IMG/VR virus record: IMGVR_UViG_3300030102_006934
Location: 310,001-374,000 of that record
DNA length: 64,000 nt
Reading direction: 5' to 3' (one strand)
Shown here: piece after piece, positions 1-18,335 of the stretch
Position numbering within the stretch: the stretch's first letter is position 1
Layout: each line of letters opens with the position of its first letter
Translations under genes and position numbers: made by a program
The notes under the pieces: model-generated
What the model was told of the DNA's origin: nothing
Databases searched by the model: none
The model's input: only the letters and a program-made list of their open reading frames with translations

Positions 1-1
1 G

Positions 2-145
2 AGAAAAGGCTTTGATAACCTTAAAGGTGGTGATTTATGTCACTACCATATAAAAGAGTCAAACGATTCTGTTACCACAAAACTTTTAGATATAAAACGA
101 ATGGATTCTGCAACCTATAACTTCAAAAATAGAAACGTAGAATAG
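2..145 (+). CDS. 3' end of a hypothetical protein (truncated by window edge)
   Basis: Open frame RKGFDNLKGGDLCHYH...NRNVE ending TAG at 143-145. Confidence 0.6.
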   Translation, partial: RKGFDNLKGGDLCHYHIKESNDSVTTKLLDIKRMDSATYNFKNRNVE

Positions 146-182
146 AGGTTTTATCCCACCTTTACCCAAAATTTATAAAGGG

Positions 183-341
183 GGTGACCATAGGTAAGTT
201 TAAACGTAGGACAATCCTACACTTGAGGTCGTAAAACATACCTCTTGGATTTGTCTCAAGTAAAATAAAGACATTCAGTGGGGCTGAATTAAAAATCTAC
301 CGTATCTACAGTGGTTACGTGAAAAATAAAAACTGAACACC
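183..341 (+). ncRNA. Candidate multibranch structured RNA
   Basis: Non-coding; outer GGTG/CACC, GACCAT/GTGGTT, GGTA/TACC; hairpins GTAGG-acaat-CCTAC, GAGGT..ACCTC, GTCT..AGAC, ATTCAG-tgggg-CTGAAT; terminator follows. Confidence 0.45.
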
Positions 342-360
342 ATTCCGATATCAAAAAACT

Positions 361-390
361 AGGGGGGGAAATTATTTTCCCCCTTTTTTT
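361..390 (+). terminator. Rho-independent terminator
   Basis: AGGGGGGGAAA-tta-TTTTCCCCCT followed by T-run. Confidence 0.8.
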
Positions 391-447
391 TTATAAAGCT
401 TTTTTTATTTTTAAAAAATAACTATAATTATTTAAAATGTTATAACA

Positions 448-5989: not shown

Positions 5990-6682
5990 ATGGGTGATAT
6001 ATTAAAAATAACATTAATTTCAGACACACATACTAGACACAATAAATTAAATCATTTATTACCTGGTGGGGATGTTTTAATTCATGCAGGTGATGTAACT
6101 TCTGTAGGTAATTTCACTGAAACTTTAGATTTTATTAAATGGTTCGATAAAATAGATAACTACGATAAAAAAATATTTATTGCCGGAAATCATGACTACT
6201 TATTTCAACAAAGACCTGACCAAACACTTGAGATGATTCTTGACCATGAAAGTGTTACCTATTTACAAGATAGTCAAACCTTTTTAGGGATTGAAAATAA
6301 TATCAAAACTTGGGGTACACCTTGGCAACCAGAATTTAAAAGTTGGGCTTTTAATTTAAAAAGGAGAAGTAAAGAAATAAAAGAAAAATGGGCTCAAATA
6401 CCAAAAGACACACAACTACTAATCACACACGGACCACCTTTTGGACGTTTAGATTGGGTCACTAAAAGTTATGAAAACGTTGGTTCTTTAGAATTAGCTA
6501 GAAGAATAGAAATAATCAAACCAAAGATACACGTTTTTGGCCATGTACATGAAGGTTATGGGTATACTCATGATGGTTATACACATTATATAAACGCTTC
6601 TATGGTCAGCCATCAAGACATGAACAACAATCCCATAAATATTATTTGGGATGTAGATAAAAATGAGGTAAAATTTTTGTAA
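5990..6682 (+). CDS. Calcineurin-like metallophosphoesterase
   Basis: SDTH, HAGD, GNHD, THGPP, GHVHE. Confidence 0.9.
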   Translation: MGDILKITLISDTHTRHNKLNHLLPGGDVLIHAGDVTSVGNFTETLDFIKWFDKIDNYDKKIFIAGNHDYLFQQRPDQTLEMILDHESVTYLQDSQTFLGIENNIKTWGTPWQPEFKSWAFNLKRRSKEIKEKWAQIPKDTQLLITHGPPFGRLDWVTKSYENVGSLELARRIEIIKPKIHVFGHVHEGYGYTHDGYTHYINASMVSHQDMNNNPINIIWDVDKNEVKFL

Positions 6683-6709
6683 TAAATAAAAATTTGTTAT
6701 ATTTGAAAT

Positions 6710-7081
6710 ATGAAAAAAATAATAATCTTAATCGTTATAATTTTAAATAGCGTGTTAGTATTATCACAAACCAACACTAACTATTTAATAGAGAATTATA
6801 CAACTAGTAAAGGACAAACTGTGAAGACCAAGAATTATACCCAACAGTATAATTTTTATATTGAAAAGTCTGAAAGACAGAGAAATATAGCAACAATAGT
6901 TGGTTTAGTTGGTGGTTTAGTTGGTGTGGTTGGGTATAACTACTTACCACGTAACACACAAGGAAATTATTATTTAATAATAACTTCGATGGCAACCTCA
7001 TGTATCTCAACAACTTTTTACATAAGGTCATCGGTTAATAGAAGAAAAGCGTATAAACTTAAAAAAAATACTTATTTATGA
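6710..7081 (+). CDS. Membrane protein with signal peptide
   Basis: N-terminal hydrophobic signal, two further TM segments. Confidence 0.7.
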   Translation: MKKIIILIVIILNSVLVLSQTNTNYLIENYTTSKGQTVKTKNYTQQYNFYIEKSERQRNIATIVGLVGGLVGVVGYNYLPRNTQGNYYLIITSMATSCISTTFYIRSSVNRRKAYKLKKNTYL

Positions 7082-7353
7082 TTAACACACTAACATACAG
7101 TTTTATGGCATTAGTTTTTTTAATTTTTATTACAGTACTAGTAATAAAAATTTATAAAATGTACCCCCAATTTGGTATTGCTCTGATGTGGGGTAGTTTG
7201 TTTACCAAGATGTTATTTATTATAACCTATACATTGGTAGTAAAAGATTTGATTGATAATCATATAATATATGCCACCTTTATTCTAATGGCTGTCATAT
7301 ATAGTATGGTACACACACTTATATCACTTAAAAACATTTTTAAAAAAGTATAA
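7078..7353 (+). CDS. Small multi-TM membrane protein
   Basis: Three hydrophobic segments, ATGA overlap. Confidence 0.7.
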   Translation: MINTLTYSFMALVFLIFITVLVIKIYKMYPQFGIALMWGSLFTKMLFIITYTLVVKDLIDNHIIYATFILMAVIYSMVHTLISLKNIFKKV

Positions 7354-7889
7354 TGAAAAAAGATAGGTTTTTATCGGTTAAAAAATTAGCAACAAAACTA
7401 CATGGAGAACAAAAAAGAAAATACTCTGGTGAACCATATGTTACACACACTATTAGGGTTGCTAAAATTGTTGAGGACCATGGTGGTGATGATAATATGA
7501 TCTATGCTGCATTACTCCATGATGTTCTAGAGGATACAGAAACCACTGAATTGGAATTGTTCTCTATGTTGTCTACTATTATAGGTAATACTGACTCTAT
7601 AGATACTCTTCGTTTAGTTAAGGAACTAACAGATGTTTTTACAACAGAAGAATACCCCAAAATAAATAGAAGTGGAAGAAAAGAAATGGAATCTTTTAGA
7701 CTGGGTAAGGTTTCACCTAGGTCACAAACAATTAAATACGCGGACCTATTAGACAATAGTGCTGATATTTTAAGAAATGATCCTAAGTTCGCTAAATTAT
7801 ACCTAAAAGAAAAAGAGATGATTTTAAATCAAATGGACCAAGGTAACCAAACACTTTATAAAAAATGTTTAAATGTCTTGAACCTTTGA
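7353..7889 (+). CDS. HD-domain RelA/SpoT-type small alarmone hydrolase (Mesh1-like)
   Basis: HGEQKRKYSGEPYVTH, AALLHDVLEDT, IKYADLLDN. Confidence 0.85.
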   Translation: MKKDRFLSVKKLATKLHGEQKRKYSGEPYVTHTIRVAKIVEDHGGDDNMIYAALLHDVLEDTETTELELFSMLSTIIGNTDSIDTLRLVKELTDVFTTEEYPKINRSGRKEMESFRLGKVSPRSQTIKYADLLDNSADILRNDPKFAKLYLKEKEMILNQMDQGNQTLYKKCLNVLNL

Positions 7890-7984
7890 TTTATTAATAC
7901 TATATTTAAATAAAGATAAGGGGTTACACAATAACGTTTGGAACTCTGTAACCTTAAAAAAGAACCTTATCTTTTTTTTATTTT

Positions 7985-8056
7985 GGCCCCTTCGTCTAGT
8001 GGTTAGGACGCTAGGTTTTCATCCTAGAAACAGGAGTTCGATTCTCCTAGGGGCTA
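7985..8056 (+). tRNA. tRNA-Glu(TTC)
   Basis: Cloverleaf; anticodon arm CTAGG-TT-TTC-AT-CCTAG; GTTCGATTC. Confidence 0.95.
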
Positions 8057-8147
8057 CTGAGTAGGTTTTCGGTGTAAAACTCTTCGGAGTACCTAATCAA
8101 AATCCAGCCATTGTTCAGAATGGGAGATTATGAATAAAAACCGAAAC

Positions 8148-8221
8148 GGTCTGGTAGTTCAGTTGGTTAGAATACCTGCCTGTCACGCAGGGGGTCGCGA
8201 GTTCGAGTCTCGTCCAGACCG
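8148..8221 (+). tRNA. tRNA-Asp(GTC)
   Basis: GGTCTGG/CCAGACC acceptor; CCTGC-CT-GTC-AC-GCAGG. Confidence 0.95.
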
Positions 8222-8231
8222 CAAATATTTA

Positions 8232-8316
8232 GGAAGATTGGCAGAGTGGTCGAATGCACTGGTCTTGAAAACCAGCATACCGAGAGGTATCGAAGGTTCG
8301 AATCCTTCATCTTCCG
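8232..8316 (+). tRNA. tRNA-Ser(TGA)
   Basis: GGAAGAT/ATCTTCC; CTGGT-CT-TGA-AA-ACCAG; long variable arm; G73. Confidence 0.95.
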
Positions 8317-8322
8317 CAAAAT

Positions 8323-8349
8323 AAACCCAAATACTCTTTGGGTTTTTTT
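8323..8349 (+). terminator. Rho-independent terminator
   Basis: AAACCCAAA-tactc-TTTGGGTTT plus T-run. Confidence 0.8.
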
Positions 8350-8373
8350 GTTAACCCAAACTATTTATTGTTG

Positions 8374-9132
8374 ATGAAACTTTTTGAAGTGTACGAAGAT
8401 ATAGTTATTGAAAACTCTTGGGGTAAACTAGAGGAAATACTACAATCAGGTTTATTTCAAGAAGAAGGTGACTCTAAATTAAATGAATTACTAGAGAAGT
8501 CACAATTGTTAATTTTTAAAGCCTTTGACATAAACCCCAAAGAGGGTGGTAAATATTTTGTTTCTGGTTCCGCTAGACTATTTAAAAATCCTAGATTATT
8601 GAATGTGTTAAACAAACACGATAAATCTTTTGAGTTAGTATTAGGTGATTTAGATGTGGTAATACCTAATCAAGAAAACTGGGAAACATTATACAAAAAC
8701 TATACAAATACAAATTCTGAATTTATAAAAGAGTTGTCACAAAAAATAAGTAAATCACCAGAAGATATTAAAAATAAGTTTTTAGAACAAAAGGGTAATT
8801 TTACAAAAGGTATTTATAGACCTGGTGTTGGCGGTATGGAACTTGTTGATGACGATATGGAAGCTTTTAAAGTTTGGGACCCTAGTAAAGCTAAAGACGC
8901 AAAAGACATGTCTGTTAGGAGCCAAAGTGACATTCTAAAAGACAGTGTTAATATAGGTGGTTATTTTTTTATGAATATAAAAGATGTATTTGATTATAAA
9001 TCAAAATTGAGTAGGGAAAAAGAAAAAAACATTGTGGCTTTCTTAAAAGATTATTTAACAGGAGAAGAGTCCCCACAAAGAGCCGAAGAACTTTTCAATA
9101 AAATAGGTGAAGAACTTGGAAAGGATAAATAA
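8374..9132 (+). CDS. Putative nucleotidyltransferase-fold protein
   Basis: FVSGSARL...GDLDVVI (GS...DxD); TATTTATT just upstream of ATG 8374. Confidence 0.55.
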   Translation: MKLFEVYEDIVIENSWGKLEEILQSGLFQEEGDSKLNELLEKSQLLIFKAFDINPKEGGKYFVSGSARLFKNPRLLNVLNKHDKSFELVLGDLDVVIPNQENWETLYKNYTNTNSEFIKELSQKISKSPEDIKNKFLEQKGNFTKGIYRPGVGGMELVDDDMEAFKVWDPSKAKDAKDMSVRSQSDILKDSVNIGGYFFMNIKDVFDYKSKLSREKEKNIVAFLKDYLTGEESPQRAEELFNKIGEELGKDK

Positions 9133-9150
9133 TTTAACTATCTTTACACA

Positions 9151-9438
9151 ATGAAAGGTAAAGAATACTTTAATAGGTTCACGGAAGATGAAAAAGTGGT
9201 TTGGTTAAAAAATTTCCACAAGTTTGGTTTTAATGATTTTAAGTCTTCAGAACAAGTAATGAAAACTGAATTTAAAAACTACTTTCAGTTTTTTTTCGGT
9301 ATATTCCCAATAGAAAAAACTGAAGAAGGTTATAGTTATTGGTCAAACCTTTTCCACAAATATAGAGAATACGATAAGTTAACTATTAAAATTGGTCATA
9401 ATTTTAAGAGTTATGTAACTGAACCAAAAATTTTTTAG
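9151..9438 (+). CDS. Hypothetical protein
   Basis: ORF track. Confidence 0.7.
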   Translation: MKGKEYFNRFTEDEKVVWLKNFHKFGFNDFKSSEQVMKTEFKNYFQFFFGIFPIEKTEEGYSYWSNLFHKYREYDKLTIKIGHNFKSYVTEPKIF

Positions 9439-9468
9439 AAATAGGTTGTTATATTAAAAAGTTTTATT

Positions 9469-9496
9469 TATATTTGTATCAGTTCTTTGAAAATAT
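9469..9496 (+). promoter_or_regulatory. TAnnTTTG promoter plus boxA-like leader of the tRNA operon
   Basis: TATATTTG-tatc-AGTTCTTTGAAAATAT directly before the RNA; near-identical TATATTTG-tgtt-AGTTATTTGAAATAT precedes tmRNA. Confidence 0.55.
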
Positions 9497-9752
9497 GACC
9501 GTGTGGCGGAATTGGTAGACGCTTACAAGAAAAACTAAAACTATGGTAAAACTTGGTTTATATGTTTCCCTCTCACCCTTGTGTTGGTGAAAAAACATAT
9601 AAGTATAATATAATATAATAATAACAACTAAAAGATTACTAACGCGTTAGTTGAAACAAATTATAATATGATAAATAATAAAGAAAAATCCAGTTGTTTT
9701 AGTTTGATTGTATGAACGAAAGTTCGTGAAGGTTCGAATCCTTCCATGGTCA
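9497..9752 (+). ncRNA. tRNA-Leu-like RNA with a ~180-nt insert replacing the anticodon loop
   Basis: Acceptor GACCGTG/CATGGTC+A73, D arm GCGGAATTGGTAGACGC, anticodon stem TACAA/TTGTA, variable arm GAAC-GAAA-GTTC, T arm GAAGG-TTCGAAT-CCTTC. Confidence 0.8.
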
Positions 9753-9850
9753 CAATAGGGTGGTAGATAAAATAGTAAAAAATCAATAATGCACCGAAAG
9801 GGGGAAATTCAATTTAGCATAAAAATCAATTACAACCACCCACAGTTTTA

Positions 9851-9924
9851 GGACTTTTAGCTCAGTTGGTTAGAGCACTTGACTCATAATCAAGGGGTCG
9901 TAGGTTCGAGCCCTACATGGTCCA
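9851..9924 (+). tRNA. tRNA(CAT), probably Ile2 (lysidine type)
   Basis: CTTGA-CT-CAT-AA-TCAAG; C4-G69 and A73; D arm resembles Ile2; elongator Met not excluded. Confidence 0.85.
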
Positions 9925-9933
9925 CGTTAATTA

Positions 9934-10017
9934 GCTCGGGTGGCGGAATAGGTAGACGCGTCAGACTTAAAATCTGATTCCCAGTTGGGAGTGAGGGTTC
10001 GATTCCCTCTCCGAGTA
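9934..10017 (+). tRNA. tRNA-Leu(TAA)
   Basis: TCAGA-CT-TAA-AA-TCTGA, long variable arm. Confidence 0.95.
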
Positions 10018-10020
10018 CTA

Positions 10021-10231
10021 GAGAGAGTGATGGGTACTCTCGGTGTTAGTAGAGGTCACGAAACTCTACCCCAAAAGCCTACGCGCGGGAAGAGCGAGGT
10101 ATGTGGATACACGGATGGGTCATCCCCCTACCCCCACATCAAGGATTGACTTTTTTATGTGGTAAGACACTAATGAGTATTTTGAATAGGAAAAGAACGT
10201 TAAAATCTAGTACACTAAACCCTAGTGTACG
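10021..10231 (+). ncRNA. Candidate structured ncRNA in tRNA spacer
   Basis: GC-rich; stems GAGAGT/ACTCTC, GTAGAG/CTCTAC, ATGTGG/CCACAT, GGATG/CATCC, GTACACTA/TAGTGTAC. Confidence 0.5.
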
Positions 10232-10236
10232 CATTT

Positions 10237-10310
10237 GGATGGGTAGCTCAGCTGGATAGAGCATCTGCCTTCTAAGCAGACGGTCGCAGGTTCGAATCCT
10301 GCCCCGTTCA
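10237..10310 (+). tRNA. tRNA-Arg(TCT)
   Basis: TCTGC-CT-TCT-AA-GCAGA; GTTCGAATC. Confidence 0.95.
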
Positions 10311-10315
10311 CTATT

Positions 10316-10342
10316 AAAACCTCGACATTAGTTGGGGTTTTT
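10316..10342 (+). terminator. Rho-independent terminator
   Basis: AAAACCTCGAC-atta-GTTGGGGTTTT plus T-run. Confidence 0.75.
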
Positions 10343-10391
10343 TATTGCCAATTAAAATAGGTTACCTACCTTTGTTCTAAACAAATAAGTT

Positions 10392-11132
10392 ATGTTAAAT
10401 ATATTTGAGGTTGGTGGATGTGTTAGAGATGAAATTCTAGGTGTAAGTACCAACGACATCGATTTTACTTTTGTTATAGAAGATACCAACCAAACAGTGG
10501 ATGAGGGTTGGGATCAAATGTTATCTCACCTAAAAGAGGCTGGGTTTAAAATATTTTTAGAAACAAAAGAATGTTTTACTGTTAGAGCTAAATTCCCCAA
10601 AAACCATATTAATGAAGGATTAGTGGCTGACTTTGTTATGGCTAGGAAAGAAGTTGGTTACATTGATGGTACTAGGAAACCTATTTTAGAACTAGGTACA
10701 CTGTTAGATGACTTAGTTAGAAGAGATTTTACAATCAATGCTTTAGCAAAAGATATGGACGGTAATATTATAGACCCCTTCGGTGGTGTAAAACATCTTA
10801 AAGAAGGTATCCTAATAACACCTCTAGATTCAAGAAAAACCATGATGGACGACCCACTTAGAATATTAAGAGCTTTAAGATTTTCTATCACAAAAGGTTT
10901 TGAGGTATCTGAAGACATTATGGAAGCTATGAAGCAACCAAACATTTTAGAGAAATTAAAAACAACAGTTAGCCAAGAAAGAATTAGAGAAGAGTTGACT
11001 AAGATGATGAAATTCGATACAATTAAAACAATGAAACTACTAGTTAATATTGATAACGAGTTTATTCATGGGTTTTTAAATATCATTTTTGAAAAAGACA
11101 TGTGGTTAAACCCAACTACCAAAAACAAGTAA
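10392..11132 (+). CDS. cca: tRNA nucleotidyltransferase (CCA-adding / poly(A) polymerase family)
   Basis: VGGCVRD, DIDF, DLVRRDFTINALA, DPLRILRALRF, VSQERIREE; adjacent tRNAs lack encoded CCA. Confidence 0.9.
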   Translation: MLNIFEVGGCVRDEILGVSTNDIDFTFVIEDTNQTVDEGWDQMLSHLKEAGFKIFLETKECFTVRAKFPKNHINEGLVADFVMARKEVGYIDGTRKPILELGTLLDDLVRRDFTINALAKDMDGNIIDPFGGVKHLKEGILITPLDSRKTMMDDPLRILRALRFSITKGFEVSEDIMEAMKQPNILEKLKTTVSQERIREELTKMMKFDTIKTMKLLVNIDNEFIHGFLNIIFEKDMWLNPTTKNK

Positions 11133-11149
11133 ATTAAAAAACAAAAAAA

Positions 11150-11404
11150 ATGAATTTATTAAATAATATCGTAGATTATTACGAAGAAGAGGAAATATTA
11201 AAGGCAGATGGTTTCGATGAGGCGGTTATTGGTATAGAAGAAGGTACCATGAGATTGATTTATTCAGTTACTAAGTGTATTGAAATACTAATGACTGAAG
11301 ATGATATGTCTATGGAAGATGCTATGGAACATTTTAGATATAATGTTAGTGGTGCTTATGTTGGTAAAAAAACACCTATATGGTCAGAGGATATGTTTTA
11401 TTAA
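11150..11404 (+). CDS. Conserved phage hypothetical protein
   Basis: ADGFDEAVIG...YNVSGAYVGKKTP. Confidence 0.75.
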   Translation: MNLLNNIVDYYEEEEILKADGFDEAVIGIEEGTMRLIYSVTKCIEILMTEDDMSMEDAMEHFRYNVSGAYVGKKTPIWSEDMFY

Positions 11405-11541
11405 CATATTTATATAGTAGTAAAATAACTTTTACATAATTTGTTTTTTTATATAGAAATAATGTACAATATTTTTGAACCAGAGAACATTCATGACGAG
11501 GATGACGAGTTAGATATTTTCTAGTATATTTATTAGAAAAT

Positions 11542-11615
11542 GGGGGATTAGCTCAGCTGGCTAGAGCACCTGCCTTGCACGCAGGGGGTCATCGGTTCGA
11601 CTCCGATATCCTCCA
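11542..11615 (+). tRNA. tRNA-Ala(TGC)
   Basis: G3-U70; CCTGC-CT-TGC-AC-GCAGG. Confidence 0.95.
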
Positions 11616-11678
11616 CAATAAAATTGTTTTTACTCACCACTATCACTTATTAACTATCTTACTATATTTATATTCGAT

Positions 11679-12131
11679 ATGTTAGATGAATTTATATTGA
11701 ATACTAAAGAGGCGAGATTAATACAAATCGATTATAAATTGATTACTGGCGATTTAAATGAGGAGTTACTATCCAAAATGTCACCTCAAGAACAAATTAA
11801 CACATATAACTTAGCTTTACTACTACCTAGTAGAAGTTGTGAAGAAGACGATGAACTTTATTGGGATCAAATACTAGTTGATGAATTTATATTATCTTAT
11901 TTAGAACAAATACTAAATAAAAGAAAAATAAAATATTTTTTAACTGACATAACAAAAGATTATTATAAAAAATCTAGTTACCTTGACCTTGATTTTATAA
12001 AAGATATCGATGGGTTTATGGATACCTTATTAACTATTGATGATGTTTTGGATAGGATAAATGATGTTGGTTTGGATAAGATAAATTTATTGGAGTTATC
12101 TTTTTTAGAAAGGAATTCTAGTAAGTTTTAG
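11679..12131 (+). CDS. Hypothetical protein
   Basis: ORF track; ATATTTATA upstream. Confidence 0.7.
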   Translation: MLDEFILNTKEARLIQIDYKLITGDLNEELLSKMSPQEQINTYNLALLLPSRSCEEDDELYWDQILVDEFILSYLEQILNKRKIKYFLTDITKDYYKKSSYLDLDFIKDIDGFMDTLLTIDDVLDRINDVGLDKINLLELSFLERNSSKF

Positions 12132-12163
12132 TTTAAACGTTAATATTTATAATAAAAGGTCGT

Positions 12164-12673
12164 ATGAAGGTCTTAGTATTGAATATGGATTACAGTCCTA
12201 TAAACGTAACATCCCTACAGAGAGGTTTTAAGTTAGTATTTAAAGGAAAGGCAGAAATAGTAACACACGAAATAAAAAACCCAATCAAAACGGAAAGAAA
12301 AAAATACAGAAGACCAACGGTAATAAGACTTTTAAGATATATTTCAGTACCATTTAGAAAGGTTAAATTAAATAGACAAAATATTTTTAGGAGAGACGAT
12401 TATAAGTGTGTGTACTGTTACTCCAAAGATAACCTCACCTTAGACCATTTAATACCTAAATGTAAGGGTGGTCAAAATAGTTGGTCTAATTTAGTTACTT
12501 CTTGTGGTAGTTGTAATGTTAAAAAGGGTGATAAGGATGTTGACTTATTCTTAGAAGAGAATAACATTGAAATGAGTCATCAACCATTTAAACCAACATA
12601 CTTATATTTTGTAGAAAAAATAAATAATGTAAACCCAGATTGGAAACAGTTTGTGGGTATAGTAAAAAAATAA
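12164..12673 (+). CDS. HNH endonuclease (McrA-like)
   Basis: VLVLNMDYSP, RDDYKCVYC, TLDHLIP, WSNLVTSCGSCNVKK. Confidence 0.9.
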   Translation: MKVLVLNMDYSPINVTSLQRGFKLVFKGKAEIVTHEIKNPIKTERKKYRRPTVIRLLRYISVPFRKVKLNRQNIFRRDDYKCVYCYSKDNLTLDHLIPKCKGGQNSWSNLVTSCGSCNVKKGDKDVDLFLEENNIEMSHQPFKPTYLYFVEKINNVNPDWKQFVGIVKK

Positions 12674-17938: not shown

Positions 17939-18335
17939 GGGGGTATTCTGGATTTGACTTGCAGTAATCAAGATTGGTGTAAGCATGTCGTGAAATGATA
18001 CTATCACGTAAATCTGTGTATTACAACTCTTAAATGGCAACATTTTAGAAAACGCAACAGTAGGTCATTTTGTGGCTGAAGATGCAGCTGTAGTAGCCTA
18101 ATTAGATTAGGACTAACTACCCATCACAACTAAGACTCCGATATTAGAGTATGTGATGTCAACGAATCGGAAACAGACTTAGTATGGTATAGTAGCCAAG
18201 TCGAACTACTATCAATGTTGTTGAACACTGTAAAAAAATCAACTATTTTGGTAAGTTAGAAAACTTAATCCTAAACATGTAGAAGACCGTTAAGATGCGG
18301 TAAGGACATGGGTTCGACTCCCATTACCTCCACCA
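17939..18335 (+). ncRNA. ssrA: tmRNA
   Basis: 5' GGGGGTATTCTGGATTTGAC, 3' GGTTCGACTCCCATTACCTCCACCA, G3-U; tag frame 18036-18101 GNILENATVGHFVAEDAAVVA*. Confidence 0.95.

What the first reader, a model, noticed from the sequence alone, without database searches (positions are those of the whole stretch)
10021..10231. ~210-nt GC-rich structured RNA between tRNA-Leu and tRNA-Arg
Seen: at least five helices (GAGAGT/ACTCTC, GTAGAG/CTCTAC, CCT-CGC/GCG-AGG, ATGTGG/CCACAT enclosing GGATG/CATCC, GTACACTA/TAGTGTAC), possible long-range GTGTT/GACAC, and a second ATGTGG downstream that offers an alternative partner for CCACAT. It would be released by tRNA processing. It lacks RNase P, SRP and tmRNA signatures.
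Basis: seen in the sequence. Interest (0 to 1): 0.6.

Follow-up and report, generated by a model that had tools for sequence, protein, structure and literature searches.

The report
Accessory non-coding RNA inside phage tRNA operon
A 218-base non-coding stretch recently inserted between two tRNA genes of an uncultured marine phage accumulates as a discrete, abundant RNA in ocean metatranscriptomes, but it matches no known RNA family, only one sub-lineage has it, and its function is unknown.

Summary
They are no more than chance gives: the fold z-score is -1.56 for the whole stretch and -0.14 for the GC-rich 5' part. Only 10019-10140 is GC-rich (50-60% against a 31% genome); 10141-10229 is AT-rich.

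Three further results stand:
- **It is a derived insertion.** It fills 10019-10236, which is a 5-nt tRNA-Leu/tRNA-Arg spacer in at least 21 contigs of close relatives and in more distant ones. Carriers form one clade with 100/100 support.
- **It is non-coding and an orphan.** There is no Rfam hit at E<=10, no BLAST or custom covariance-model hit elsewhere, and every ORF is broken in natural variants.
- **It is expressed.** One metatranscriptome holds a 169-nt contig at depth about 182 lying exactly on 10019-10187. It starts 1-2 nt after the tRNA-Leu end, and neighbouring genes are at depth 0. Two other studies hold variants.

Five of six substitutions at proposed stem positions keep pairing through G-U on the + strand, which is suggestive only.

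Best reading: an accessory RNA co-transcribed with the tRNAs and released by tRNA end-processing, like T4 RNAC/RNAD or tRNA-spacer sponge RNAs. A function in trans is inferred, not shown.

The parts
10019..10236 (+). Whole element: the tRNA-Leu/tRNA-Arg spacer, which is a roughly 214-nt insertion relative to the 5-nt spacer (CAAAT / CGAAT / CGTAT) of relatives.
   Evidence: Alignments; spacer census; clade mapping.
10019..10187 (+). RNA species seen as a complete 169-nt contig in metatranscriptome X11 (depth 181.7, 0 differences).
   Evidence: table 8 record 2. Flanking bins 10324-11200 are at depth 0, and the tRNA-Leu bin is at 1.5.
10019..10140 (+). GC-rich 5' domain (50-60% GC) holding four hairpins. 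About 7% of its positions differ between sub-lineages.
10023..10041 (+). Hairpin H1 (GAGAGUG/UACUCUC), four nt from the RNA 5' end. Its loop carries GAUGGGUA, a copy of the tRNA-Arg 5' end.
10049..10069 (+). Hairpin H2 (GUAGAG/CUCUAC). The loop varies in sequence and by 2-nt indels between variants. 10064 C>A opens the loop-closing pair.
10078..10099 (+). Hairpin H3 (CCU-CGC/GCG-AGG with bulged A10081). Variants 10084 C>U and 10095 C>U both give G-U pairs.
10101..10139 (+). Hairpin H4 (AUGUGG/CCACAU around GGAUG/CAUCC). It competes with CCACAU pairing to AUGUGG at 10157-10162. Variants 10101 A>G and 10122 A>G give G-U pairs. It contains GGAUGGGU, identical to the first 8 nt of tRNA-Arg.
10141..10229 (+). 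AT-rich 3' half. No differences are listed here in the X17 and X19 variants, which differ at about 7% in the 5' half, and L097 and L121 are identical to the window here. It is mostly unpaired in the predicted folds.
10210..10230 (+). Hairpin H5 (GUACACUA/UAGUGUAC, -9.6 kcal/mol), six nt before the tRNA-Arg 5' end. Variant 10230 C>U gives a G-U pair.
9934..10018 (+). tRNA-Leu(taa), with no encoded CCA. Its 3' processing would create the element's 5' end.
10237..10311 (+). tRNA-Arg(tct). RNase P cleavage at its 5' end would create the element's maximal 3' end.
10318..10344 (+). Terminator-like hairpin plus a T-run (-12.6 kcal/mol) that closes the tRNA transcription unit ahead of the CCA-adding enzyme gene (10392-11132).

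Best explanation
The element is an accessory, lineage-specific non-coding insertion, a kind of 'RNA moron', in the tRNA operon of an uncultured marine phage.

Proposed mechanism:
1. It is transcribed on the + strand together with tRNA-Met, tRNA-Leu and tRNA-Arg.
2. It is cut free by the enzymes that mature the flanking tRNAs: 3' processing of the CCA-less tRNA-Leu on its left and RNase P at tRNA-Arg on its right.
3. It persists as a discrete RNA of about 170-218 nt. Its ends are guarded by hairpins H1 and H5.
4. By inference, it acts in trans as a small decoy or sponge/regulatory RNA. The invariant AU-rich 3' half would be the interacting surface and the GC-rich hairpins the stabilising scaffold.

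Shown: the insertion, the non-coding nature, the orphan status, RNA accumulation far above the neighbouring genes, and a 5' end next to the tRNA-Leu 3' end.

Inferred: which enzymes cut it, the exact 3' end, the fold, and any function in trans.
For: Insertion:
- L068, L101-L120, L127, L135 and L137 have a 5-nt Leu/Arg spacer. So do the more distant L071, L072 and L075.
- Carriers (the window, L013, L093, L094, L096, L097, L121, L122) form one clade with 100/100 support, nested among empty-site contigs.

Non-coding:
- Natural 2-nt indels lie in two of the + frames. 10140 C>T makes a TAA stop in the third.
- tblastn of the three + frames against the phage collection finds nothing.

Orphan:
- No Rfam match at the gathering threshold or at E<=10.
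- No blastn or nhmmer match elsewhere.
- Covariance model R1 finds only the element itself in G000. It finds nothing in two 190-kb relatives and only one chance-level hit (L018, 9.4 bits, E 6.1) in 85 loci.

Expression:
- 20 marine runs from 9 studies hold the element, and 8 of them are RNA libraries.
- In X11 a 169-nt contig at depth 181.7 lies exactly on 10019-10187, while the flanking bins are at 0 and the tRNA-Leu bin is at 1.5.
- In X17 a 494-nt contig at depth 200.6 carries a variant in the tRNA-Met/Leu...Arg context, while the CCA-gene bins are at 0.3-13.
- X19 holds a 205-nt variant contig.

Structure and strand:
- At proposed stem positions, 5 of 6 substitutions (10084, 10095, 10101, 10122, 10230) are C>U or A>G changes that keep pairing as G-U on the + strand. 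They would break pairing on the - strand.
- No differences are listed at 10141-10229 in X17 or X19, against about 7% in the 5' half.

Precedents:
- T4 RNAC and RNAD are phage small RNAs of still unknown function (PMC9697503). That their genes lie in the T4 tRNA gene cluster is from my own knowledge.
- Internal and external spacers of tRNA operons give sponge RNAs such as 3'ETS-leuZ (10.1101/2021.04.25.441314).
Against: - Fold energy is no better than that of shuffled sequence.
- The element is absent from most close relatives, so it is dispensable.
- As a recent foreign insertion, its GC-richness may reflect the donor rather than selection.
- All RNA evidence comes from assembled contigs, which cannot give true ends, strand or quantity.
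- The substitution argument rests on 6 sites (roughly p = 0.03-0.06), and C/T changes are also the commonest change at unpaired sites.
- No complementary target was found in the phage genome above chance: the longest antisense word is 13 nt, and same-sense words are as frequent.
- The host is unknown, so host targets could not be sought.
Confidence: 0.5

Rival explanations
1. It is a neutral passenger. A piece of foreign DNA landed in a recombination hot spot just 3' of tRNA-Leu. It is transcribed only because it sits in a strongly expressed tRNA operon, and the excised spacer survives simply because it is GC-rich and hairpin-capped. It has no function.
For: - The same junction carries at least four alleles in this phage population: the 5-nt spacer, a 57-nt insert (L129-L134), this 214-nt insert, and a replaced tRNA-Arg plus a reverse ORF (L103, L108, L110). 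L099 has a deletion into tRNA-Leu.
- The element is dispensable in most relatives.
- Fold energy is at chance level.
- There are no homologues anywhere.
Against: - Depth is about 180-200 against 0-13 for neighbouring genes in two independent studies.
- The 89-nt AT-rich half shows no differences listed in variants whose 5' half differs by about 7%.
- 5 of 6 stem substitutions are G-U compatible.
- The element persists in several diverged sub-lineages (window type, L097, L121, X17, X19).
Confidence: 0.3
2. It is a cis-acting cassette. An internal weak terminator (stem 10119-10125/10143-10150 plus U6 at 10151-10156), an overlapping promoter-like TTGACT (10146-10151) and the mutually exclusive H4 pairings together tune read-through into tRNA-Arg and the CCA-enzyme gene.
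For: - Three mutually exclusive pairings surround CCACAU, GGAUG and CAUCC.
- A U6 tract follows a possible stem.
- TTGACT is present.
Against: - The terminator-like stem is weak (-4.6 to -5.9 kcal/mol, 17-nt loop) against -12.6 for the real terminator after tRNA-Arg.
- The X11 RNA contig runs through it to 10187, and the X17 and X19 contigs run into tRNA-Arg.
- The promoter scan lists no site in the element.
- Relatives express tRNA-Arg without it.
Confidence: 0.07
3. It is a decayed remnant of tRNA sequence: partial duplications of the tRNA-Arg 5' end, or former tRNA genes of the array.
For: - GATGGGT occurs 33 times in 380 kb but three times within 10029-10244. GGATGGGT at 10113 and GATGGGTA at 10029 copy the first 8 nt of tRNA-Arg.
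- 10029-10054 can be drawn as an acceptor strand plus a D-arm-like CUCU/AGAG hairpin (read from the sequence).
Against: - No tRNA-model hit in the element even at E<=10.
- ARAGORN finds none, with or without introns.
- Local alignment to all eight tRNAs is at chance level, z <= 2.5.
- Outgroups show a 5-nt spacer, not extra tRNAs.
Confidence: 0.08
4. It is a small non-autonomous mobile element (MITE, or an IS200/IS605-type palindrome-associated element) that inserted next to the tRNA.
For: - It shows clean presence/absence.
- Hairpins sit close to both ends (H1, H5).
Against: - It is single-copy in G000.
- No copy turned up in the exact-pattern scans: three element patterns against IMG/VR contigs and two against 185,579 species genomes.
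- It has no terminal inverted repeats and no clear target-site duplication.
- No transposase was found among the neighbouring genes scanned against Pfam.
Confidence: 0.04
5. It encodes a small protein.
For: Three + strand ORFs of 40-54 aa overlap it.
Against: - 2-nt indels and a nonsense change occur in natural variants.
- The ORFs start or end inside tRNA genes.
- tblastn finds no hits.
Confidence: 0.01

Closest known systems
Phage T4 RNAC and RNAD (species 1 and 2 stable RNAs of the T4 tRNA gene cluster)
   Same: Small non-tRNA RNAs of a phage that accumulate during infection and whose function is still unknown (PMC9697503). That their genes lie among the T4 tRNA genes and are co-transcribed and processed with them is from my own knowledge.
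   Different: There is no sequence similarity: blastn against 50,697 phage records finds nothing. This element is a recent insertion limited to one sub-lineage of an unrelated marine phage. At 170-218 nt it is also larger.
tRNA-operon spacer RNAs acting as sponges (E. coli 3'ETS-leuZ, ITS-derived sponges)
   Same: It is derived from a transcribed spacer of a tRNA operon, released by processing, and stable enough to act in trans (10.1101/2021.04.25.441314). It also has an AU/A-rich unpaired stretch, including four ARN triplets at 10185-10196.
   Different: No target is known here. It is phage-borne, not chromosomal. It is much longer and carries a GC-rich multi-hairpin domain. Pairing partners could not be tested because the host is unknown.
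Phage 'morons' and hyperplastic-region inserts
   Same: It is a discrete accessory insertion between conserved genes, variably present among near-identical phages, at a site that carries several alternative inserts.
   Different: Classical morons are protein-coding units with their own promoter and terminator. This one is non-coding and relies on the tRNA operon's transcription and processing.

Membership tests
Any Rfam 15 family (tRNA, tmRNA, RNase P, SRP, 6S, Y-like RNAs, ribozymes, riboswitches, group I introns) | Covariance-model match at the gathering score, or at least at E<=10 | tested here: not met
   No hit lies in the body of 10019-10236 on either strand. Only tRNA-anchored hits touch its last few bases.
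T4 RNAC/RNAD-type stable RNAs | Gene lies inside a phage tRNA cluster on the same strand | tested here: met
   it sits between tRNA-Leu and tRNA-Arg, with all tRNAs on the + strand and a terminator only after tRNA-Arg.
T4 RNAC/RNAD-type stable RNAs | Sequence homology to the T4 RNAs | tested here: not met
   blastn (word 11, E<=10) against 50,697 phage records gives only four chance-level hits to transposase genes of C. difficile phages.
T4 RNAC/RNAD-type stable RNAs | Accumulates as a discrete stable RNA | tested here: inconclusive
   a 169-nt contig at depth 181.7 confined to the element, with neighbours at 0. Contigs cannot prove ends, strand or half-life.
tRNA-spacer-derived sponge RNA (3'ETS-leuZ type) | Originates from a transcribed spacer of a tRNA operon and is released by processing | tested here: inconclusive
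   Position is met. The contig 5' end at 10019 is 1-2 nt after discriminator A10017. The enzymes are not identified.
tRNA-spacer-derived sponge RNA (3'ETS-leuZ type) | Base-pairs with and titrates specific sRNAs or mRNAs | not testable with these tools
   The host is unknown. Within the phage genome there is no complementarity above chance.
MITE / IS200-IS605 palindrome-associated element | Multiple copies, terminal inverted repeats or family-typical ends, and a target-site duplication | tested here: not met
   It is single-copy. No other copy turned up in the pattern scans. No TIR or TSD is seen at the junctions. Sub-terminal hairpins are the only shared trait.
tRNA or tRNA pseudogene | Cloverleaf recognisable by a tRNA model | tested here: not met
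   Alignment to the phage's tRNAs is at chance level. Only the 7-8-nt GATGGGT(A) repeats are shared.
Promoter/terminator regulatory cassette | Strong hairpin plus U-tract that ends transcripts, and a consensus promoter | tested here: not met
   The stem is worth only about -5 kcal/mol. RNA contigs read through it. The promoter scan lists no site in the element.

The most novel reading that the evidence does not exclude
The element is a recently captured, phage-borne decoy RNA that rides the tRNA operon for expression and processing. Its two copies of the first 7-8 nt of tRNA-Arg (one forming a GGAUG/CAUCC mini-helix) and its invariant AU-rich arm would let it titrate a host factor. That factor could be a tRNA-directed defence nuclease, a tRNA-processing or repair enzyme, or a host sRNA or Hfq-like chaperone. 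On this reading non-coding 'RNA morons' are a currency of phage-host conflict in the ocean.
Probability: 0.12. Interest if true: 0.7.

Novelty: new member of a known kind. Interest (0 to 1): 0.4.

Why it matters
Phage tRNA islands are normally read only as tRNA supplies or as counter-measures to tRNA-cleaving defences. Here a non-tRNA RNA of unknown family was inserted precisely between two tRNAs. It is variably present among near-identical phages and is far more abundant in ocean metatranscriptomes than the neighbouring genes.

If it is functional, it would be a natural case of a phage gaining a regulatory or decoy RNA by plugging it into the tRNA processing pathway, the same logic as T4 RNAC/RNAD, whose role is still unknown decades on. 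The presence/absence polymorphism gives a ready-made natural experiment. If it is not functional, it is a clean example of how tRNA junctions act as insertion hot spots, and of how stable junk RNA can mimic a gene in metatranscriptomes.

Tried and rejected
- Rfam at the gathering threshold and at E<=10 found nothing in the element.
- blastn against GenBank phages found nothing.
- blastn and nhmmer against all fetched loci found only the same phage lineage.
- Exact-pattern scans of IMG/VR with three element patterns found nothing (the first pattern spanned the variable site 10112). Two tRNA-based patterns found no further carriers. tRNA-Leu look-alikes in L008, L009 and L011 have no such element downstream.
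- Two 23-nt patterns scanned against 185,579 species genomes found nothing.
- Covariance model R1, built from the 5' domain, found nothing significant beyond the element itself.
- Coding potential is rejected.
- Homology to the non-coding regions that follow the DUF2828 genes, or to any of the phage's tRNAs, is at chance level.
- A target search by complementarity within the phage genome gave nothing above chance.
- An internal terminator is too weak and is read through.
- L068 first looked like a secondary loss inside the carrier clade. It is a recombinant mosaic whose insertion-proximal part is of the empty type.
- A hammerhead-like core (CUAAUGAG ... GAAA) was considered from the sequence. 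It was dropped because the essential G5 is A and Rfam gives no hit.
- An SRP-like GGAA/AGC motif in H3 was considered and dropped for the same lack of a model hit.
- The X17 and X19 variant sequences were rebuilt only from the difference table. They were used only inside scripts, not sent to the alignment tools, so no formal pair-count test was run on them.

Full report
**Context.** The window is bases 310,001-374,000 of a 380,343-bp IMG/VR virus record with 31% GC. Around the finding lie tRNA-Glu, Asp and Ser (7985-8317), tRNA-Met (9851-9925), tRNA-Leu(taa) (9934-10018), tRNA-Arg(tct) (10237-10311) and tRNA-Ala (11542-11616), all on the + strand. Pfam assigns the neighbouring genes as a metallophosphoesterase, an HD-domain protein, a CCA-adding/poly(A) polymerase-type enzyme (10392-11132) and an HNH endonuclease. 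A hairpin plus T-run follows tRNA-Arg at about 10318-10344 (-12.6 kcal/mol). The element is therefore the internal spacer of a tRNA transcription unit.

**The observation.** Around H4 there are competing pairings.

The folding energy is not unusual. The z-score is -1.56 for the 218 nt, -1.22 for 10019-10187 and -0.14 for the GC-rich 127 nt. A sequence of this composition would give this many helices by chance. Only 10019-10140 is GC-rich (50-60%); 10141-10229 is about 30% GC.

**No known family, and not coding.**
- Rfam 15 gives nothing in the element at the gathering threshold or at E<=10 on either strand.
- The three + strand ORFs are excluded. Natural variants carry 2-nt indels at 10059-10061, and 10140 C>T creates TAA in the 52-codon frame.
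- tblastn of all three + frames against 50,697 phage records finds nothing.

**It is a derived insertion.** I used the CCA-enzyme gene 80 nt downstream as a handle to fetch 80 metagenome loci and further assemblies.
- The element is present, 98-100% identical, only in L013, L093, L094, L096 (all identical to the window), L097, L121 and L122.
- At least 21 contigs whose CCA enzyme is 90% or more identical have tRNA-Leu and tRNA-Arg separated by just CAAAT or CGAAT. These include L068, L101, L102, L104-L107, L111-L120, L127, L135 and L137.
- The more distant L071, L072 and L075 have CGTAT.
- On a maximum-likelihood tree of the CCA gene the carriers form one clade (100/100) nested among empty-site contigs.
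- L068 has a CCA protein 99% identical to the window's, yet it is a recombinant mosaic. Its tRNA-proximal part is of the empty type.

The simplest history is one insertion of about 214 nt into a 5-nt spacer.

The site is a hot spot. L129-L134 carry an unrelated 57-nt insert with its own GC-rich hairpin at the same junction. L103, L108 and L110 carry a different tRNA-Arg allele and a reverse-strand ORF. L099 has lost the 3' part of tRNA-Leu.

**The donor is unknown.**
- The element is single-copy in the record.
- Covariance model R1, built on 10019-10145 with 30 base pairs, finds nothing in two 190-kb relatives. In 85 loci it gives only one chance-level hit (L018, 9.4 bits, E 6.1).
- Exact-pattern scans of IMG/VR and of one genome for each of 185,579 prokaryote species are empty.
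- There are no terminal inverted repeats and no convincing target duplication.
- One internal oddity is non-random. GATGGGT occurs 33 times in 380 kb but three times within 216 nt here. GATGGGTA sits in the H1 loop and GGATGGGT in H4, and both copy the first 8 nt of tRNA-Arg. Overall alignment to the tRNAs is nonetheless at chance level.

**Expression.** The k-mer index finds the element in 20 marine runs from 9 studies, and 8 of those runs are metatranscriptomes. I laid four runs on 9300-11200.
- In RNA run X11, a complete 169-nt contig at depth 181.7 lies exactly on 10019-10187 with no differences. Bins over the CCA gene and the upstream intergenic DNA are at 0, and the tRNA-Leu bin is at 1.5. 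DNA carry-over would cover the neighbours too, so it cannot explain this.
- Unprocessed precursor would cover tRNA-Leu. A graph break caused by co-occurring empty-site variants would leave about 30 nt of tRNA-Leu on the contig. The start at 10019, 1-2 nt after discriminator A10017, therefore fits a processed 5' end. The tRNA has no encoded CCA, and a CCA-adding enzyme is encoded next door.
- In RNA run X17, from another study, a 494-nt contig at depth 200.6 joins tRNA-Met and tRNA-Leu, 100 other letters that replace 10021-10029, the element from 10030 (16 differences) and the start of tRNA-Arg. The CCA-gene bins are at 0.3-13.
- RNA run X19, from a third study, holds a 205-nt variant contig on 10040-10239.

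These are contigs, so strand, true ends and abundance remain to be shown with reads.

**Variation.** Across L097, L121, X14, X17 and X19, the variable sites are:
- 10019 and 10021, in the 5' tail;
- 10060, 10061 and 2-nt indels, in the H2 loop;
- 10064, the H2 closing pair, which is broken;
- 10084 and 10095 in H3, 10101 and 10122 in H4, and 10230 in H5;
- 10112, 10140, 10187, 10232 and 10234, all unpaired.

The five non-disruptive stem changes are all C>U opposite G or A>G opposite U. Pairing therefore survives as G-U on the + strand but would be lost on the - strand. With six sites this is suggestive only (about p = 0.03-0.06), and C/T changes are also the commonest change at unpaired sites. 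The AT-rich half 10141-10229 shows no listed difference in X17 or X19, whose 5' half differs by about 7%. This points to constraint on the 3' half or to recombination. RNAalifold on the four rebuilt variants keeps H2, H3 and H5 but adds no covariation.

**Interpretation.** Shown: a lineage-specific non-coding insertion that is transcribed and accumulates as a discrete RNA. Its 5' end abuts the tRNA-Leu 3' end. Hairpins sit 4 nt from that end (H1) and 6 nt before the RNase P site of tRNA-Arg (H5).

Inferred: release by tRNA-maturation enzymes and a function in trans. I favour a stable accessory RNA acting as a decoy or sponge (confidence 0.5 for the whole statement). The strongest rival is a neutral passenger that is stable by composition alone (0.3). 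A cis-acting terminator/promoter cassette is unlikely. The only hairpin-plus-U6 candidate is worth about -5 kcal/mol and is read through, and no promoter-like site is listed in the element.

**Comparison with the known.**
- The closest analogues by mechanism are T4 RNAC and RNAD. That paper calls them phage small RNAs of still unknown function (PMC9697503); their location in the T4 tRNA gene cluster is from my own knowledge.
- Bacterial tRNA-operon spacers can also act as sponge RNAs, such as 3'ETS-leuZ (10.1101/2021.04.25.441314).
- There is no sequence or model-level membership in any family.

I class the element as a new, orphan member of the known kind 'non-tRNA stable RNAs embedded in tRNA operons'. 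Interest is moderate. The expression and the natural presence/absence polymorphism make it testable, but structure and function are unproven and its distribution is narrow.

Noticed in passing
It is interrupted by a 174-nt AT-rich intervening sequence between positions 32 and 33, and that sequence ends in G. Rfam gives no group I intron hit. The same split gene is present in relatives L099 and L137. It could be an intron-bearing tRNA or a disrupted one.
   Followed up: partly
G000 whole record (window = 310,001-374,000): ORFs at about 2-83 kb are collinear with ORFs at about 229-308 kb at 28-71% amino-acid identity. Related contigs are 190-200 kb long. The 380-kb 'jumbo' record may therefore be two related roughly 190-kb genomes joined, or a genome with a large ancient duplication.
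   Followed up: partly
window 17939-18335 (+); G000:C1:82619-82988: The record holds two tmRNA genes. One is found by Rfam in the window (106.7 bits) but missed by ARAGORN. The other is found by ARAGORN in the other half of the record.
   Followed up: no
L006 2911-3424 (overlaps about window 1-447); L007 2947-3191; L002 2652-2950: Each DUF2828/DUF7788 gene (two in G000, one ending 74 nt before the window) is followed by 250-500 nt of non-coding DNA. That DNA has a long-range stem (...AGAAUC/G ... GAUUCUG...), a shared AGAGA(A/G)GAGG motif and a terminator, so it is a candidate partner RNA. My recollection that these proteins resemble Ro/TROVE-vWA proteins with Y-like RNAs was not confirmed: a PDB sequence search found no Ro60.
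   Followed up: partly
L129-L134 (junction about 215-160 nt before the CCA gene); L103, L108, L110; L099 849-915: The junction just 3' of tRNA-Leu is hypervariable in this phage population. Alleles include a 57-nt alternative insert with a GC-rich hairpin, an alternative tRNA-Arg allele plus a 136-aa reverse ORF, and a deletion that removes the tRNA-Leu T-arm.
   Followed up: partly
window 5990-12673: RNA-end-related genes cluster around the tRNAs: a metallophosphoesterase, an HD-domain protein, a CCA-adding enzyme and an HNH endonuclease. This suggests a tRNA maintenance or repair island.
   Followed up: no
window 10185-10196: Four consecutive ARN triplets (AAU AGG AAA AGA) lie in the invariant AT-rich half. 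This is the kind of motif that binds the Hfq distal face in 3'ETS-leuZ. It could easily be chance in A-rich sequence.
   Followed up: no
G000:C1:97680-97972: This is the strongest GC island of the record (up to 71% GC in 80 nt, against a 31% genome). It lies outside the window and was not examined.
   Followed up: no
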